This document shows positions 12,120 through 38,877 of a stretch of DNA of 54,710 nt, one piece after another. Below the pieces are notes generated by a model. That model saw only the letters and a program-made list of their open reading frames with translations, had not been told where the DNA came from and did no database searches. The stretch comes from Ministeria vibrans ATCC 50519 (Eukaryota > Protista > Filasterea), in the NCBI GenBank assembly GCA_943704425.1, contig CALSCP010002373.1:1-54710 (forward strand), in the 5' to 3' direction. Position 1 is the stretch's first letter; the number at the start of each line of letters is the position of its first letter. The position numbers were made by a program, and so were the translations under genes.

Positions 12120-15100
12120 TTCAATAATAATTCATGTTTTTTTATATGTGTATGTGTGTAGATGTTGAAGACACCTGCTCGAGATGGTCGTCGCTGGACC
12201 GAGGCACGTGGCTCTTTTGCAGATGGTACAGGGTCACAAGTGATCAACAATACGGCGTTGGTGGCGGGTCATGTGTACTTTGCGGACGTAAAGATTGACG
12301 AGATCAACGAGGTTTTCACTGTGTACGGGCTGTTGCTCGAGCTGAACAGGCCTGGCACGTACAACAACGTTGGACGCTTGTACGGTGACGTGTGGAGCAG
12401 TGACAAGTTTAAGTTGTTCCTGCGTTGGGATTTTCTGGGCACACAGTCTGCACCTATTTCGGTGGGTCAAGGTGGACAGCTTGTCATACCGCTTGACATT
12501 GAGATGGTTGACATGACACACTCCAGGGTTGCCGACAACTTTGACCTTGTCAACTTGACAGTGGGTGCTTGCGTGGATCGCAGCTCTTCGTTGGCACTGA
12601 GTGCCACCAGCGACATCGAGCTAGTGGCGAGTTCAGTCAAGTTTAACCTGGCCAACGGAGTCGCTTCGTGGCCGGCGATGCGTGTGTACGGCAAACCAGG
12701 CACCTACTGTGTGTACGTGAGCCCGGGCGCCGCTGACAATATTGTGTACCGACTCTCGGCGCAGTTTACCATGGAGGAGTGCACTGGCATTGAGGTGAAG
12801 GACGGCTCGAGCGACGCTGGCTACACCCGATGCATGGAGGAGATTGTGGTGCGAAGTGGACTGCAAGTGGGCTACACCGTCTCGGGCAGCGTTCTTCTCT
12901 TCATCTTCCTCGTGACTATTGTGGTTCTGGTGGTGCGTCGCACGGGCAACATTGTGGTGATTGTTGGGCTGCCCACGCTGCTGCTGATTGCCATTGGCAT
13001 GATGGTCGGTCTGGTCGTGCCTGTGATGTGGGACATTGCGGCAAGCAAGTCGACGTGTCTGCTGCTCATTTGGGTGTCGCACATCTGCTTTGCGCTCGTC
13101 ATGACGCCGATTGTGGTCAAATTGCTCCATTTGTCGCACAGCAAGAGTGTCAACAATGTGAGTCTGCAGGTGCCCGCGTCGAAGGTGATTGTGCCTACTG
13201 TGGTGGCACTGTTGTGTGTGTTTGTGTACCTGCTGGTGTGGTCCCTCGCAGACTCGACGCTGGGCGTCACGGTGGTTTTCAACACGGACACCGACACGGC
13301 GTTTCATCAGTGTGCCTACAATGCGGTTGCAAACGCATTCATTTTGACGATTGAGGCACTCGTGCTGCTGTGGTCGCTGTACATTGTATGGGCGACGCGT
13401 CACCTCACGACCATGTTCAGCGAGTCAACCTTTTACTATGCTATTGTGGCGTGTACCAGCGCGTTGTGCTTGATTGCGGCGGTGACGTACACGGCGGTGC
13501 TTGAGTCGCGTGCGGCGGGACAGTACTCGGCTGCGGGTGGTGTAATGCTGTTTGTGGCCTTTGCCATCTTGTGCTTCATGTACTTGCCCATCCTGATCAA
13601 GTTGTACACCAAGTCATGGATGGACGGCGGCCACCACCTGTTCTTGTCGTACAGCAAGGGTGACAAGAAGGTGACGCAGCAGCTAGCGCGTGCACTCACT
13701 GCCAAAGGCTTTGGTGTCTATGTCGACGAGGTGCGCTCGGACGCGGGTGCGTCGTGGCGCCGTGAGGTGGCGCAGCACCTGCGCGCTTCGCAGTACGTGC
13801 TCTTTGTGGTGTCACCCGAATCGGTACAGTCGTCGTATTGCCAAGAGGAGATTCAGTTTGCGTATGACAACAAAATTCAGGTAGGGGATGGTCGAAAAAA
13901 AAATACAATTGCACAAACATGAAGATATATATTATCAATGATTTGATATTAATAATATATTTCATTAATATTATTGCAGATTTTGCCGATTATTGTCAAC
14001 GAAGGATTCTCGAATGTGATTGACCATGGGCTGGACATGTTGATCAAACGGTTCCAGTGGACTATGTTTACGACGCCGGGACCATACGGGTTTGAGCAGG
14101 GATTGGAGAGTCTGCTAATGGGATTGCGCAAGTTGGAATCGCAACGGCAAACGAAAATGGTGATGGATGGTGTGGTAGAGATGCGAGAAGGATCACACGT
14201 AGCCTTGACCAAGACGTCGTCGGCGACGTCTCATGATAGTGTCTTAGGTTCGGGTGGTGGTGGAGGTGCCGGCGGCGGCGCTGCCGACTCGAACGGAGTG
14301 GGTCTCACTGGAGCAAAGGGTTCTAACAATGCGCTTGCACAGCTGCTCAAGGCCAAGGAGTTGTTCTTGTCGTGGTCACATCGCGATGGGGAGTTCACCA
14401 AGGAACGACTGTGGCCCGATCTCGAGTCGCACAACCACGGCTGCTGGATTGATTGTATGGGACTGGCGAGTGGTGATGCGTGGCGCCGTGAAATTGGACA
14501 AGCCATCTCGGGGTGCGAGACACTGCTGTTTGTGCTGACGCCGCGCTCGGCAGAGTCGCAGTATTGCATGGAGGAGGTGTTTTATGCCAAGTCACAGAAC
14601 AAGAAGGTGATTGTGTTGTTGCTGGAGGACAGCACGCGTGTGTTGAGTCTGCCCAACTCGGTGGAGTTTACAGAGTTACTTATGAGCTATCCGGTAATTG
14701 ACTTCCTCAACATCGACACGGAGTACTACGAGTCGTTTGACCGTTTACTAACCCTGCTGTCGGCACGCGAGCGCACCATGCTGACGGCGGTCGACGGTGA
14801 TGCGGAGTTGTGGACATCTGTGGCGCAGGCGATGCACAACATGACGGGCATCTATCGGATTTTGCAGAGGGGCGCACAACAGGTGTACGGGGCGAGCAAC
14901 CCGACGACGACGGCGCGCAACCATTCGCTTGGGCCCTCGCTTGACCCCGCCCAGCATGTCTCGACCAACAAAGAGCTCACGTCGGTCGTGGTCAACAACA
15001 GTGCGTCGGCGGGCTCACACCAGGGTCGACTGAAGACTTTGGCGTTGGTGGACGAGGAAGCGGACGAGCAGAAGGTTGTTTTTGAGGCGTCCATGATGAG

Positions 15101-15131
15101 CGAACTCGGTGTTTCCGAGACTGCCCTCTAA
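9760..15131 (+). CDS. Large receptor: Pmp/beta-helix GGA(I/V)-repeat ectodomain, class C-like 7TM domain and two cytoplasmic TIR domains; true 5' end uncertain
   Basis: Exons 9760-11955, 12162-13880 and 13980-15131 are all phase 0; many GGAI/GGAV...N repeats; seven hydrophobic helices at about 12860-13605 with class C-like C..W..F.L..K, ATR...FSES and YLP motifs; TIR1 LFLSYS...W...YCQEEI and TIR2 LFLSWS...W...YCMEEV. Confidence 0.85.
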
Positions 15132-15937
15132 CATTATTATTTTAATTTCTTTTTTCGTTCGTTCTCCCAGTAATAGTGACACAATGAAAACATAAATTCC
15201 GTATACGTATTCTTAAATATAATTATAATTATTATTTCTATTATGAAGAGCCCTTCTACAAATAATGAGAAAACCGATTAAAAGACAAAAATGATAAAAA
15301 CTGGCAGTGGTTATCTCTCCTAGTTCTCCGACTAGAAGTATATTTTCTATTTCAAGTCCGATTTGCAAAAAATCATCCAATAATCTGAGGGGTCTTCTTG
15401 CCGGCGCTGTCGCCTGTCGCCACGCATCATCTCCATCTCAAACACCAGATTTAGTGTCGTCTTCTTCGCTTTTTTTTGTTTTTTTTTTTACAGAATTCGC
15501 GTATTTCTGAATTGACACACTTCACTTCAAACAACTCCCGGGCACTCATCAGTGAGACAGTGACAGTCACCTTGCTCATGGTGACATGTGGGACACGAAA
15601 AAAGACAAATTGGAAAAAAAAAATCATGGTAGAAATTTCTAGAAGTTAGAAAATTCTAAAGTACGGGATACCCACTGTTAAAAAACGATTGAAAAGAAAT
15701 TTTGTGTTATTTGTGAGTGTGTTATCAGGTGTAATCACTGTAAAGGTAAAATGCATGGGCAATGGAAGTTATGGGGATACGGAATCATTGGAAAGACGAT
15801 TGCAGAAAAGACAGAAAAATAAACTCTTTCAAAGCGCTGTCACATGAATGATTGCCACAGTGGATTAGTTATACAATGTGTGATGTCGCTTGCGTAGCCA
15901 TTTCTATTTGACGTGACATAGGGAATTTCAAAATACG

Positions 15938-15954
15938 GTTTTATACCATTTTAA
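15938..15954 (+). promoter_or_regulatory. Possible upstream TATA-like element for the permuted tRNA
   Basis: TTTTATA followed by TTTTAA about 20-30 nt upstream of the pairing leader; position only. Confidence 0.3.
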
Positions 15955-15980
15955 GCCCCAATCTGCGACTAACCGTCGAA

Positions 15981-16063
15981 ATGCGAAGGTCGTGCGTTCA
16001 AGTCGCACTCGAGGCATTATTTCCTGCCTCGATAGCACAGTTGGCTAGTGCATCGCACTTGTA
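15981..16063 (+). tRNA. Circularly permuted tRNA-Thr(UGU): 3' half 15981-16016, 9-nt spacer, 5' half 16026-16063
   Basis: Rejoined halves give a fully paired cloverleaf: acceptor GCCTCGA/TCGAGGC plus A73, D arm GCAC/GTGC, anticodon arm TCGCA-CT TGT AA-TGCGA, T arm GTGCG-TTCAAGT-CGCAC. Confidence 0.9.
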
Positions 16064-16066
16064 TGG

Positions 16067-16074
16067 TTTTTTTT
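16067..16074 (+). terminator. RNA polymerase III terminator (T8)
   Basis: T-run beginning 3 nt after the end of the tRNA 5' half. Confidence 0.7.
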
Positions 16075-16221
16075 GTTTTTTTTTTACTTTGCCTTTACTG
16101 TGATGAATCTTTTTTTTTGGTACATATAATATCTTCTAATTTTTTGATGATAAAAATAAATATGTCACAATTTTTTTTTTCATCAAGACAGGTTTTATTT
16201 ATTTATTGCGAGTTTCTACGA

Positions 16222-17408
16222 CTAGCATGTGCTTGATGACCCCCAATTAGGCCGTGCACCGGTGTACATACTGGCAAGGCTGTCGAACCCATTGGGATGC
16301 GAAGAAATGAGCTGGACACACCAGCTGCTGAGATCCGCGTTAAAGCTGGTCGCGCTTTTGAACCTGAGAAACAAAAAAAAATGGAGGAGATTAGGAATGA
16401 ATGGTTGACCAAGACTCTTACATGCTGACCATGTTGATCACGAGGGGAACATTCCAATTACTCAAATCACTACACGTATCAAAAGAGATGTAGTATATAA
16501 AATAGAGAGTGAGAGAGAGAGTGAGAGAGAGTGAGAGAGAGGAGAAAGAAACAAAGTGAGAGGAAAAAAAAACAGTGAGAGGAGAAAAAAACAAAGTGAG
16601 AGGGGAAGGAAACAAAGTGATGAGAAAGAAACAAAGTGAAAGGAGAAAGAAACAAAGTGAGAGGAGAAAGAAACAAAGTGAGAGGAGAAAGAAACAAAGT
16701 GAGAGGGGAAAGAAACAAAGTGATGAGAAAGAAACAAAGTGATAGAGAGAGTGAGAGGGAGAGACGAAGAAAAAGAAAAAAACAAGTAAGAGAGGAAAGA
16801 GTACAAAATTAATTAATACTATAACACTATTGCAGTGTGTTGGGACCTGGTGAAGGCAAAGGCGCTTTCAAACATGCTTTGCATGTTTATTGCCTTGGAG
16901 GTGTCCCAGTTGGACAGGTCGGATGTAAACACAGACGCACCAAAGAAAGTACCACCAAACGTCGTCACCGAGCCGACCTAAATGCAAAAACATACACTCG
17001 ATAAAGTAAAAATTGATAGACGGGTGTTTTAAACTTACATGCCATTGACTCAGGTCCCGATTGAAGTTAGGGCAATCAGCAAAAGCCGCGCTCATGTCGG
17101 TCAGCGAGTCGGTCTGCCATGTGGACACGTCTCCGTTAAACGCAGTCGCCCCTTTGAATGCCTGGTACATCTTAAGCAAATTACGCACGTCCCATTGGCT
17201 CAAATCGACATTGAAGAGCGCGCAGTCACGCACAAATTGGTTCATGTAGAGCACATTGGACACTTGCCAGCCAGATACATTGCCCACAAACACTAGACAC
17301 TGGTCAAACTAAAATATGTATGTACAGAGAGAAAGAGAGGAGGGGAAGAGAAAAAAAGTGATAGATAAAGAAAGTGAAAACCCCAAAGTAAGAAATAGTA
17401 AGAGAAGC

Positions 17409-37482: not shown

Positions 37483-38877
37483 ATGGACCTCAAGACGAGG
37501 AAGCTGCTGCGGAAGCAGAATGCTGTGTATGAAACGGTGAATGCGTCTATCCGAGCCATCCGTCAAGAGGCATTCGAACGGTTTCGCAATCTTCTCTTGA
37601 GAAATCAGCATTGCCTCCCAGGAACGGTGGATGCCGTCCATCGCGCTGGTTCAACGGCCAAAGCAACAGACATTTGGAAGTCTGACGTGGACATCGTCAT
37701 CGCGTTTAATGATTTGGCGCCACAGAAAATTGCGCAGTGGATGAGCCGCGCACTCGACGGAATCGAAGCAGTGCTCCAGCTCGACGAAGAGTTCCCGTGT
37801 CGTCGACGCGACGAATTTCTGATATCGTGCTTCTACAAGAAAGGCGGCATTCTGTGCGAAATGGATCTTTTGCCAACATGTCGTATTGAAGGAATGCGGC
37901 AATTGAGCCTACTTCCTCATGAAAAGTAAGGAAAGATTTATTCACAATAATAATAATAATAATAATAATAATAATTATTATTATTACGTCTTTGTTAGTT
38001 ATGACTTCAATAATTAACCCAAATTTATGATTATTTTTTTGTGCTTTAGGTACTACGACGTTGCAATGACGGCTGAGTTGAAATCAGTGATATCGACAAT
38101 GAGATATAGTCCGCCAAAGTGGCGCCGCCATTGCAAGACAGTGGTGAAGGTTCTGAAGCGAGTTTTGGCGCGTGACATCAAAGGTGAGAAGTACTGCTCC
38201 TTCTTGTGCGAACTCGTCACCATGCATGCGGCTCAGTCACTTCGAGATTCCCAACATCGATGCGTGATGTATGAGGACCTTCTCATGCGAGTGGTTCAAT
38301 ACTTGGCGCACCCTGAGCGCCTTCATATCACATGGGGACATGCGTCGAAACACGCGCCTGAGCTGCCTCTCGTTCTTCTACCAAGCACAGCCGTGTACAA
38401 AAACGTCTGCAAAAACCTTGAGAAAAAGTGGCCCGACAGTGCCAAAAGACTGATGGAAAAGATCTTGAATGACCCCAGTCAATTGTTGGGTGCGTGTAAT
38501 TATTTAGGACTCAACGTACTCGCGTGAAAATTAATACTGTTCTTCCTTTCTCTGTAGATCAAGTCGCGCTCGCGGAAGACACGGAGTGGATTTTCGATTT
38601 GGCAGTTGAAAATGAGTCCCCATCAGCGTGCACAATGCTGTTGCTCCAGCACAAAAGAGAGAGCGCGAAAGCGACGGCACGCAGGGAGGCGCAGCTTTAC
38701 AAGGCGAGACAGCGCGCCCAGCTGACACTCGATTCGGACACAGACTCGAGCTCGTCTGATGCCGATTCATGCGATTCGGGTTCCGAGGAGATGTACATGT
38801 CCGACGTACGCGTCGACTGGAGAAGCAAAGAGGAGCCGGAATGGAGCAGTGATGGCGCTGGGTGTGTAATCTCGTAA
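37483..38877 (+). CDS. 2'-5' oligoadenylate synthetase-like nucleotidyltransferase (OAS/cGAS superfamily), about 400 aa, three exons
   Basis: Exons 37483-37925, 38050-38489 and 38558-38877 splice in frame; AGSTAKAT...SDVDIVI, a third Asp in EMDLLP, and OAS1_C-like KTVVKVLK, SFLCELVTMHA, LHITW and PLVLLPS...KNV. Confidence 0.8.

What the first reader, a model, noticed from the sequence alone, without database searches (positions are those of the whole stretch)
15971..16074. Circularly permuted tRNA-Thr(UGU) gene in a probable unicellular holozoan
Seen: the 3' half (positions 38-73, ATGCGAAGGTCGTGCGTTCAAGTCGCACTCGAGGCA, 15981-16016) lies upstream of the 5' half (positions 1-37, GCCTCGATAGCACAGTTGGCTAGTGCATCGCACTTGTA, 16026-16063), separated by TTATTTCCT. 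All four stems pair without mismatch when the halves are rejoined. The break fits the canonical intron position 37/38, the B box precedes the A box, a T8 terminator follows, and I saw no other half in the window. Known: permuted tRNA genes mature through a circular intermediate using the splicing endonuclease and ligase, then RNase P and tRNase Z; they are described in Cyanidioschyzon, prasinophytes, chlorarachniophytes and Thermofilum. Inference: I know of no report from opisthokonts, so this could be an independent origin in a relative of animals, and standard tRNA scans would miss it.
Basis: partly seen in the sequence, partly recalled or inferred. Interest (0 to 1): 0.95.

Follow-up and report, generated by a model that had tools for sequence, protein, structure and literature searches.

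The report
Back-to-front threonine tRNA gene, Ministeria
A threonine tRNA gene is written with its back half in front of its front half in Ministeria vibrans, a single-celled close relative of animals; this layout was reported before only from a few algae and one archaeon, and its expression is not yet shown here.

Summary
Window 15981-16016 encodes tRNA positions 38-73. Nine bases follow, then 16026-16063 encodes positions 1-37. Rejoined, the halves give a mismatch-free 74-nt tRNA-Thr(UGU). In the native order, ARAGORN and Rfam find nothing.

The locus is not an assembly artefact. DNA contigs from two separate studies span it unchanged and at the depth of their neighbours.

It is one of at least 13 permuted tRNA genes that I found in this genome. 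A model built only from seven others hits this locus alone in the window (74 bits, E 4e-19). Earlier agents of this scan reported the same kind of gene for other tRNAs of this genome.

The genes share four features:
- a TATA-like box about 39 bases upstream;
- a long T run downstream;
- a leader that pairs with the trailer;
- a base pair between position 32 and leader base -3, present in 9 of 9 genes, with 32 and -3 changing together.

No conventional nuclear tRNA-Thr(UGU) was found, although ACA codons are common.

The host is Ministeria vibrans (Filasterea). Scaffold count, assembly size and mitochondrial scaffold length match the published assembly.

The likely route is excision of the ends by the splicing endonuclease, ligation into a circle, then RNase P and tRNase Z. 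Expression is untested: the poly(A) RNA contigs do not cover the gene.

The parts
15942..15952 (+). TATA-like upstream box (TATACCATTTT), the putative external Pol III promoter. It starts 39 nt before tRNA position 38.
   Evidence: the same box (consensus about TATA[G/T]CAC[T/A]TTT) lies 33-41 nt before the 3' half of the other permuted genes. It also lies upstream of most ordinary nuclear tRNA genes of this genome. Its function is inferred.
15967..15980 (+). 5' leader of the precursor; the start is inferred from the TATA spacing. AACC at 15971-15974 pairs with trailer GGTT. G15978 (leader -3) pairs with C32 (16058). A15979, A15980 and A38 would form the 3-nt bulge at the 3' cut site.
   Evidence: cofold and fold of the precursor. 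The 32:-3 pair is standard in 9 of 9 type II genes, as 7 C:G and 2 T:A.
15981..16016 (+). 3' half of tRNA-Thr(UGU): A38, the anticodon-stem 3' strand, variable loop AGGTC, the T arm with the B box (GTTCAAGTC), the acceptor 3' strand and discriminator A73.
16017..16025 (+). Intervening sequence TTATTTCCT, which joins A73 to G1. RNase P and tRNase Z would remove it from the circular intermediate. Its longest T run is 3, so it holds no terminator.
   Evidence: Linkers of 3-26 nt occur in the sister genes.
16026..16063 (+). 5' half: the acceptor 5' strand, U8, the D arm with the A box, the anticodon-stem 5' strand, and loop C32 U33 with anticodon TGT (16060-16062) and A37.
16064..16085 (+). 3' trailer and terminator. 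T+1 is followed by GGTT (16065-16068), which pairs with leader AACC. T8 lies at 16067-16074 and T10 at 16076-16085.
   Evidence: T runs of 7 or more follow all but one of the sister genes I checked (the Cys gene is the exception) and the ordinary tRNA genes.

Best explanation
This is a working, circularly permuted (type II, junction 37/38) nuclear gene for tRNA-Thr(UGU) of the filasterean Ministeria vibrans. The proposed pathway has four steps, all inferred. First, RNA polymerase III starts about 5-14 nt before A38, directed by the upstream TATA-like box, and stops in the T8/T10 run. This gives a precursor of leader, 3' half, 9-nt linker, 5' half and trailer. Second, the precursor folds into a cloverleaf whose acceptor stem is closed by the linker. 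Its anticodon stem is extended by a leader-trailer helix (AACC:GGUU) and by the C32:G(-3) pair, which mimics an intron-containing pre-tRNA. Third, the tRNA splicing endonuclease (two catalytic-domain genes are present) cuts after A37 and before A38, and RtcB joins A37 to A38 into an 83-nt circle. Fourth, RNase P and tRNase Z open the circle at G1 and A73 and discard the linker, and CCA is added. The product reads ACA codons.
For: Shown here:
- The anatomy is exact and the cloverleaf is perfect, with all universal bases (U8, A14, G15:C48, G18G19, U33, A37, GUUC, A58, C61).
- The leave-one-out model gives 74.4 bits, E 3.9e-19.
- The gene is close to the ordinary nuclear tRNA-Thr(AGU) genes, and the differences in all four stems are compensatory.
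- In my own census, 13 distinct permuted tRNA genes at 15 loci keep cloverleaf pairing: 91% of cells paired against 59% when shuffled, and 18 of 21 pairs change on both sides.
- The promoter-like box sits at a fixed distance, T-run terminators follow, and there is no T run longer than 3 inside the gene.
- The 32:-3 pair is Watson-Crick in 9 of 9 genes and covaries.
- The lowest-energy fold of the precursor is the permuted cloverleaf closed by a leader-trailer helix, z -2.6.
- The only other tRNA-Thr(UGU) lies on the mitochondrial scaffold. The nuclear genome otherwise shows Thr(AGU) twice and a permuted Thr(CGU).
- ACA makes up 15 per 1000 codons.
- DNA contigs of two studies span the locus unchanged.
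- Sen2/Sen34-type domains and RtcB are encoded.

The pathway itself follows Soma 2014 (PMC3978253).
Against: No RNA evidence exists. Contigs of two spliced, poly(A)-type RNA runs leave 15871-16138 uncovered. That is expected for a tRNA, but it proves nothing. The junction does not form a strict hBHBh' motif: in the canonical register the central helix has only 1 of 4 pairs. In the lowest-energy fold the 5' cut site lies inside a helix. The A and B boxes are in the wrong order for TFIIIC, so transcription rests on an untested upstream element. The tRNA census is incomplete, because the tool scores only the best candidates and the assembly has 2860 scaffolds.
Confidence: 0.8

Rival explanations
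1. A dead relic. A tandem duplication of an ordinary tRNA-Thr(UGU) gene lost its outer halves, leaving a 3' half plus a 5' half that is not expressed or not matured. ACA would then be read by another tRNA, for example inosine-modified Thr(AGU) or an undetected gene.
For: The tandem-duplication route is the standard model for how permuted genes arise (PMC3978253). Ordinary tandem tRNA arrays exist in this genome (C1275, C585, C2083). There are no RNA data.
Against: There is not one mismatch in 21 stem pairs, and the changes relative to Thr(AGU) are compensatory. The promoter box sits at the family's fixed distance and the terminator is intact. The 32:-3 pair and the leader-trailer helix lie outside the tRNA body and would not survive in a relic. 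No other nuclear Thr(UGU) was found. At least 12 other tRNAs show the same design, several of them anticodons for which I saw no ordinary copy.
Confidence: 0.13
2. An assembly artefact: a collapsed or mis-joined tandem array of ordinary tRNA-Thr genes.
For: The assembly comes from short-read metagenomic data of a polyxenic culture.
Against: Contigs of 892 nt (a 2022 run) and 741 nt (a 2011 run) from different studies cover 15642-16492 and 15642-16381. Neither differs inside the gene, neither shows a joint there, and their depth is like that of the neighbours. The 9-nt linker is too short to hold a terminator and promoter between two ordinary genes.
Confidence: 0.02
3. A split gene. The two halves are transcribed or processed as separate RNAs that work as a nicked or trans-joined tRNA without a circular stage.
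For: Split tRNAs exist in some archaea (PMC3218864).
Against: The 9-nt linker holds no promoter box and no T run. A single box lies upstream and a single terminator downstream.
Confidence: 0.05

Closest known systems
Type II (37/38) circularly permuted tRNA genes of Cyanidioschyzon merolae (e.g. Thr(CGT), Thr(AGT), Leu(CAG); Soma et al. 2007; review PMC3978253)
   Same: The 3' half lies before the 5' half on one strand. The intervening sequence is short (9 nt here, 7-74 nt there). The junction is at 37/38. A TATA-like box lies upstream and a T stretch downstream, with no signals in the linker. The genome also holds permuted genes with extra introns in the T arm, one that appears to have a D-loop junction, and many ordinary genes with odd introns. 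As reported for C. merolae, six-frame searches found no TFIIIC B-block or Tau95 domain (weak evidence).
   Different: The host is a heterotrophic holozoan, not a red alga. The junction here is only a relaxed bulge-helix structure. Expression, aminoacylation and the circular intermediate were shown for C. merolae and are not shown here.
Permuted tRNA genes of prasinophytes (Ostreococcus, Micromonas) and the Bigelowiella natans nucleomorph (Maruyama et al. 2010, as cited in PMC3978253 and PMC13578239)
   Same: Nearly all are type II, with linkers of 5-64 nt and an AT-rich upstream region.
   Different: Those sets hold 2-6 genes per genome, mostly Ser, Leu, Cys and iMet. Here I found at least 13 distinct tRNAs, including Thr, Val, Ile, Gly, Arg, Lys, Cys and Ser. 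The lineage is not photosynthetic: no Photo_RC gene was found.
Ordinary eukaryotic intron-containing pre-tRNAs (intron at 37/38, anticodon-intron pair)
   Same: The cut sites flank positions 37 and 38. Position 32 pairs with the base 3 nt before the 3' cut and leaves a 3-nt bulge, which I recall as the determinant of 3' cleavage by the eukaryotic endonuclease. The mature domain is intact for the enzyme's ruler.
   Different: The 'intron' consists of the two free ends of the transcript, so ligation circularises the RNA and the acceptor end must be opened afterwards.

Membership tests
Circularly permuted tRNA gene, type II (Soma 2007/2014) | The 3' half lies upstream of the 5' half on the same strand, joined through a short intervening sequence at the acceptor ends. 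| tested here: met
   15981-16016, a 9-nt linker, then 16026-16063.
Circularly permuted tRNA gene, type II (Soma 2007/2014) | The rejoined halves give a canonical cloverleaf with the universal bases, and the junction falls at 37/38. | tested here: met
   (ARAGORN Thr(tgt), 74 nt). (leave-one-out model, 74.4 bits, no non-standard pair).
Circularly permuted tRNA gene, type II (Soma 2007/2014) | The sequences flanking the junction (leader and trailer) form a bulge-helix-bulge motif. | tested here: inconclusive
   The outer helix AACC:GGUU sits in the right register, and the C32:G-3 pair leaves a 3-nt bulge at the 3' site. The central helix has only 1 of 4 pairs, so the motif is relaxed. Sister genes range from 1/4 to 4/4.
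Circularly permuted tRNA gene, type II (Soma 2007/2014) | There is one transcription unit: a promoter-like element upstream, a T stretch downstream, and neither in the linker. | tested here: met
   These are sequence features only; transcription was not observed.
Circularly permuted tRNA gene, type II (Soma 2007/2014) | The gene is expressed through a circular RNA intermediate into a mature, aminoacylated tRNA. | not testable with these tools
   only assembled contigs of poly(A)-type RNA runs were available, and none covers 15871-16138.
Circularly permuted tRNA gene, type II (Soma 2007/2014) | The host encodes a splicing endonuclease and an RNA ligase. | tested here: met
   (two tRNA_int_endo domains, 61 and 54 bits). 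(RtcB, multi-exon, 180 bits).
Essential single-copy isoacceptor (the argument used for Thermofilum pendens) | No redundant conventional gene exists for the same anticodon. | tested here: met
   (no second copy of either half). (the only other Thr(tgt) is on the mitochondrial scaffold). (20 pattern hits against 22 in the control; only the mitochondrial one is a tRNA). Limit: the assembly is a draft and the scan is partial.

The most novel reading that the evidence does not exclude
Ministeria vibrans, a close unicellular relative of animals, keeps a large part of its nuclear tRNA set in scrambled form: at least 13 permuted genes, most with the junction at 37/38 and one apparently in the D loop, and some with extra introns in the T arm. 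These genes, including the sole tRNA-Thr(UGU), are expressed through circular intermediates. The holozoan splicing endonuclease would then accept substrates thought to be limited to algae and archaea. Permuted tRNA genes would have arisen independently of plastid-bearing lineages, or would be older in eukaryotes than assumed.
Probability: 0.7. Interest if true: 0.85.

Novelty: new member of a known kind. Interest (0 to 1): 0.8.

Why it matters
Permuted tRNA genes were an oddity of three algal lineages and one archaeon, and their spread was discussed in terms of algal ancestry and endosymbiosis (PMC13578239, PMC3978253). A full set in a heterotrophic filasterean breaks that link. It places the phenomenon next to animals, where the splicing endonuclease (TSEN) is well studied and medically relevant. 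It also gives a culturable organism (ATCC 50519) in which to ask how a ruler-type eukaryotic endonuclease handles circularising substrates and T-arm introns. The shared upstream box raises a second question: can Pol III transcribe tRNA genes whose A and B boxes are in reverse order? In practice, tRNA annotation of protist genomes with standard tools undercounts genes. Here the nuclear Thr(UGU) decoder would be called missing.

Tried and rejected
- **Standard scans.** ARAGORN and Rfam on the native window found nothing, as expected for a permuted gene.
- **Brute-force rejoining.** Rejoining at every cut position and testing with ARAGORN was too permissive to be useful. I replaced it with an explicit stem search.
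- **False positives.** C1275 looked permuted in the pattern scan. It is an ordinary tandem array of intron-containing tRNA-Leu(AAG), with a T9 terminator and a TATA box in the spacer. Model R1 hits on C2083 and C585 are likewise tandem ordinary genes. ARAGORN's 'Thr(cgt) with intron' on C1793 looks like a class II Ser(CGA) gene, so I did not count it as Thr.
- **RNA evidence.** The runs available were contigs only. Two proved to be spliced, poly(A)-type RNA, but they do not cover the gene. This gives no verdict on expression.
- **Host identity by protein search.** The GPCR-TIR ORF hit only a metagenome contig. An ORF from another contig hit nothing. Exact look-ups failed. PARG gave only 40-45% matches, to animals and other opisthokonts. 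A note from an earlier agent naming Ministeria was then checked against the assembly statistics of the genome paper and held.
- **Relatives in metagenomes.** An exact pattern across the linker found nothing in the JGI metagenome contigs.
- **Domain searches with no hit.** Focal_AT, the TFIIIC B-block and Tau95 gave no hit in six-frame searches. These are weak negatives in an intron-rich draft genome.
- **Not done.** I did not search with the rejoined 74-nt sequence, because it has no reference and I did not type it in. One search, run with the native 104 bases, covers near-identical copies of either half.

Full report
**1. The observation**

- tRNA positions 38-73 lie at 15981-16016.
- The linker TTATTTCCT lies at 16017-16025.
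- Positions 1-37 lie at 16026-16063.
- The trailer TGG follows, running into a T8 run (16067-16074), a G and a T10 run (16076-16085).

A script joined the two halves in tRNA order. ARAGORN called the product a 74-nt tRNA-Thr(tgt) with seven acceptor, four D, five anticodon and five T pairs, none mismatched. It carries U8, A14, G15:C48, G18G19, U33, A37, G53UUC, A58, C61 and discriminator A73.

In the genomic order, ARAGORN finds no tRNA in the whole window or around the locus. Rfam has no family at gathering score. The 104-base stretch occurs once in the 29.7 Mb assembly.

**2. Is it an assembly artefact?**

I laid contigs of four public runs on 15000-17000. Two DNA runs come from different studies, dated 2011 and 2022. 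One gives a single contig over 15642-16381 and the other over 15642-16492. Neither differs inside the gene. The only change is one extra T in a later T run at 16109. Neither has a joint in the region, and their word depth resembles that of the neighbouring contigs. A collapsed tandem array is therefore very unlikely.

The other two runs are RNA. They skip 16362-16419 and 16470-16846 with CT..AC ends, which are GT..AG introns of a minus-strand gene. One carries a poly(A) tail at about 16171. Their contigs stop at 15145 on the left and begin at 16166 on the right. The tRNA gene thus lies between two convergent mRNA genes and is not covered. That is what poly(A) libraries give for any tRNA, so it says nothing about expression.

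**3. It belongs to a family in this genome**

A pattern that asks for a B box followed within 19-60 bases by an A box gave 97 hits, no more than the reversed-pattern control (129). In eleven of the hits, the seven bases after the T arm pair with the seven bases before U8. A stem search resolved seven tRNAs of these (eight loci) as type II genes with the junction at 37/38:
- Thr(UGU), the present gene;
- Val(AAC), two copies;
- Arg(ACG);
- Ser(UGA);
- Cys(GCA);
- Gly(UCC);
- Gly(CCC).

One hit, on C1275, is an ordinary tandem array and served as a control.

On an alignment of the seven genes, the permuted cloverleaf is paired in 91% of cells, against 59% after shuffling. Eighteen of 21 pairs change on both sides.

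A covariance model of this layout (R1) was searched over the genome. It added:
- Ile(AAU), two copies;
- Thr(CGU), with an extra intron in the T loop;
- a second Arg(ACG), with an insert in the T loop.

Reading the sequences also showed Arg(CCG) and Lys(UUU), both permuted with an intron in the T stem. It showed an Arg(UCG) gene whose junction seems to lie in the D loop and which also has a 37/38 intron. These five readings were made by eye and are less secure. In total I count 13 distinct permuted tRNA genes at 15 loci.

Earlier agents of this scan reported the same kind of gene for other tRNAs of this genome, with counts of 'at least ten' and 'at least 15'.

**4. A leave-one-out test**

I re-aligned seven other permuted genes to R1, without the window. 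From that alignment I built model R2 and searched the window. The only hit on either strand is 15981-16063, full length, at 74.4 bits and E 3.9e-19, with no non-standard pair. The locus therefore fits the family on evidence that does not include it.

**5. Signs of function**

(a) *Similarity to the ordinary Thr genes.* The rejoined sequence is close to the two ordinary nuclear tRNA-Thr(AGU) genes on C159 and C1908. The differences in the acceptor, D, anticodon and T stems are compensatory.

(b) *A shared upstream box.* A box TATACCATTTT lies at 15942-15952, starting 39 nt before A38. The sister genes carry TATA[G/T]CAC[T/A]TTT-like boxes 33-41 nt before their 3' halves. Most ordinary nuclear tRNA genes have the same box upstream. 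This fits one external Pol III promoter for all tRNA genes. Soma proposed the same for C. merolae, where the reversed A and B boxes cannot bind TFIIIC. Six-frame searches found no TFIIIC B-block or Tau95 domain here, but that is weak evidence.

(c) *Terminator placement.* Nothing inside the gene or the linker exceeds T3. T8 and T10 runs follow it.

(d) *The junction.* In the register of a 37/38 intron, position 32 pairs with leader base -3 in 9 of 9 type II genes. The pair is C:G seven times and U:A twice, and never mixed. I recall this anticodon-intron pair as the determinant of 3' cleavage by the eukaryotic endonuclease. In this gene it is C32 (16058) with G15978, which leaves A15979, A15980 and A38 as a 3-nt bulge. 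Just outside, trailer GGUU (16065-16068) pairs with leader AACC (15971-15974); the Ser(UGA) gene has CGUU:AACG at the same place. The central helix of a strict bulge-helix-bulge has only one of four pairs here, so the motif is relaxed. Thr(CGU) and Gly(CCC) have four of four.

(e) *Fold of the precursor.* The lowest-energy fold of 15963-16070 is the permuted cloverleaf closed by a leader-trailer helix, at -37.6 kcal/mol and z -2.6.

(f) *Need for the tRNA.* Among 63 Rfam tRNA matches, ARAGORN finds Thr(tgt) only on contig C1523, the mitochondrial scaffold. A pattern for an ordinary Thr(UGU) gene, with or without a short intron, gave 20 hits against 22 in the control, and only the mitochondrial one is a tRNA. 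ACA makes up 15 per 1000 codons, about a fifth of Thr codons, in seven long ORFs of the window, all with Pfam domains.

(g) *The enzymes.* Two tRNA-intron endonuclease catalytic domains and an RtcB ligase are encoded.

**6. The host**

No photosystem reaction-centre gene is present. The PARG protein of the window is 40-45% identical to proteins of animals and other opisthokonts, with no closer match.

Two earlier notes named Ministeria vibrans, and I checked this. The genome paper is Ocaña-Pallarès et al. 2022 (PMC9492541). Its Supplementary Information 1 reports 2860 scaffolds, 29,797,085 bp and a single mitochondrial scaffold of 55,949 bp. The assembly here has 2860 contigs and 29,722,531 bases. 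Its tRNA-rich contig C1523 ends at base 55,949 (locus L031) and carries a tRNA with anticodon UCA, which ARAGORN labels SeC and which I read as a UGA-reading tRNA-Trp typical of mitochondria.

The run table also fits: one organism label sequenced in 2011 and again in a multi-species study of 2022.

Neither that paper nor its supplements mention tRNA. A full-text search for 'permuted tRNA' (74 papers, 40 listed) and for Ministeria with tRNA found no report outside C. merolae, prasinophytes, the B. natans nucleomorph and Thermofilum pendens.

**7. How it most likely works**

The anatomy and the family signals above are shown. The pathway below is inferred from the C. merolae work (PMC3978253).
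1. Pol III transcribes leader, 3' half, linker, 5' half and trailer as one RNA.
2. The leader and trailer pair next to the anticodon stem.
3. The Sen endonuclease cuts after A37 and before A38.
4. RtcB joins the two ends into an 83-nt circle.
5. RNase P and tRNase Z cut at G1 and after A73, releasing UUAUUUCCU.
6. CCA is added.

I put 0.8 on a working permuted gene, 0.13 on an unexpressed relic, 0.05 on separate half-transcripts and 0.02 on an artefact.

**8. Verdict**

This is a new member of a known kind, a type II permuted tRNA gene, in a lineage where the kind was not known. Its interest is high for tRNA biology and for the biology of animal relatives. That interest is tempered by the lack of any RNA evidence, and the same discovery has been made on other tRNA genes of this genome within this scan.

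Noticed in passing
window 12162-13922 (+) and 13974-15131 (+): One ORF joins a class C GPCR seven-helix domain (7tm_3) to a C-terminal TIR domain. A second TIR-domain ORF lies directly downstream. The only close database match is a 99% identical protein on a 1.9 kb metagenome scaffold.
   Followed up: partly
window 16166-16977 (-): A minus-strand mRNA has GT..AG introns at 16362-16419 (58 nt) and 16470-16846 (377 nt) and a poly(A) site at about 16171. That site is about 100 nt from the tRNA terminator, so the tRNA sits between two convergent mRNA genes.
   Followed up: partly
window 16608-16808: A GA-rich simple repeat inside the 377-nt intron reaches word depths up to about 500,000 in all runs. 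It shows many length variants and back-joints, so it is a genome-wide microsatellite-like repeat.
   Followed up: no
G000 C2350:47625-47736 (-), L093: tRNA-Thr(CGU) is also permuted at 37/38 and carries an extra insert of about 30 nt in its T loop. Of the three nuclear Thr isoacceptors, I found only Thr(AGU) in ordinary form.
   Followed up: partly
G000 C2431:223937-224016 (-), L064: By eye, an Arg(UCG) gene appears permuted with its junction in the D loop (like type I) and also has a 12-nt intron at 37/38. Its linker is TTTTTAAA.
   Followed up: partly
G000 C335 (L039), C437 (L043), C883 (L103): Permuted Arg(CCG), Lys(UUU) and a second Arg(ACG) carry inserts of about 28-57 nt in the T stem or T loop. 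One insert holds a T6 run, which suggests that Pol III here needs longer T runs to stop.
   Followed up: partly
G000 C2083:7140-8070 and 38150-38620; C585:35680-36570; C2093: These are dense head-to-tail arrays of ordinary tRNA genes. On C2083 they include anticodons unusual for eukaryotic nuclei: Val(GAC) and Arg(GCG). They gave false hits to the permuted-gene model. Their origin (nuclear, viral or contaminant) is open.
   Followed up: no
G000, whole genome: Six-frame searches found no TFIIIC B-block (PF04182) or Tau95 (PF09734) domain. A TATA[G/T]CAC[T/A]TTT box precedes both permuted and ordinary tRNA genes. Together these hint at TFIIIC-independent tRNA transcription, as proposed for C. 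merolae.
   Followed up: partly
public runs X6, X12-X14, X16-X19: The 8 kb around the gene is held at 24-82% of its words by runs labelled as algae or seawater metagenomes and as cultures of other organisms. This protist or close kin therefore turns up in marine samples and algal cultures.
   Followed up: no
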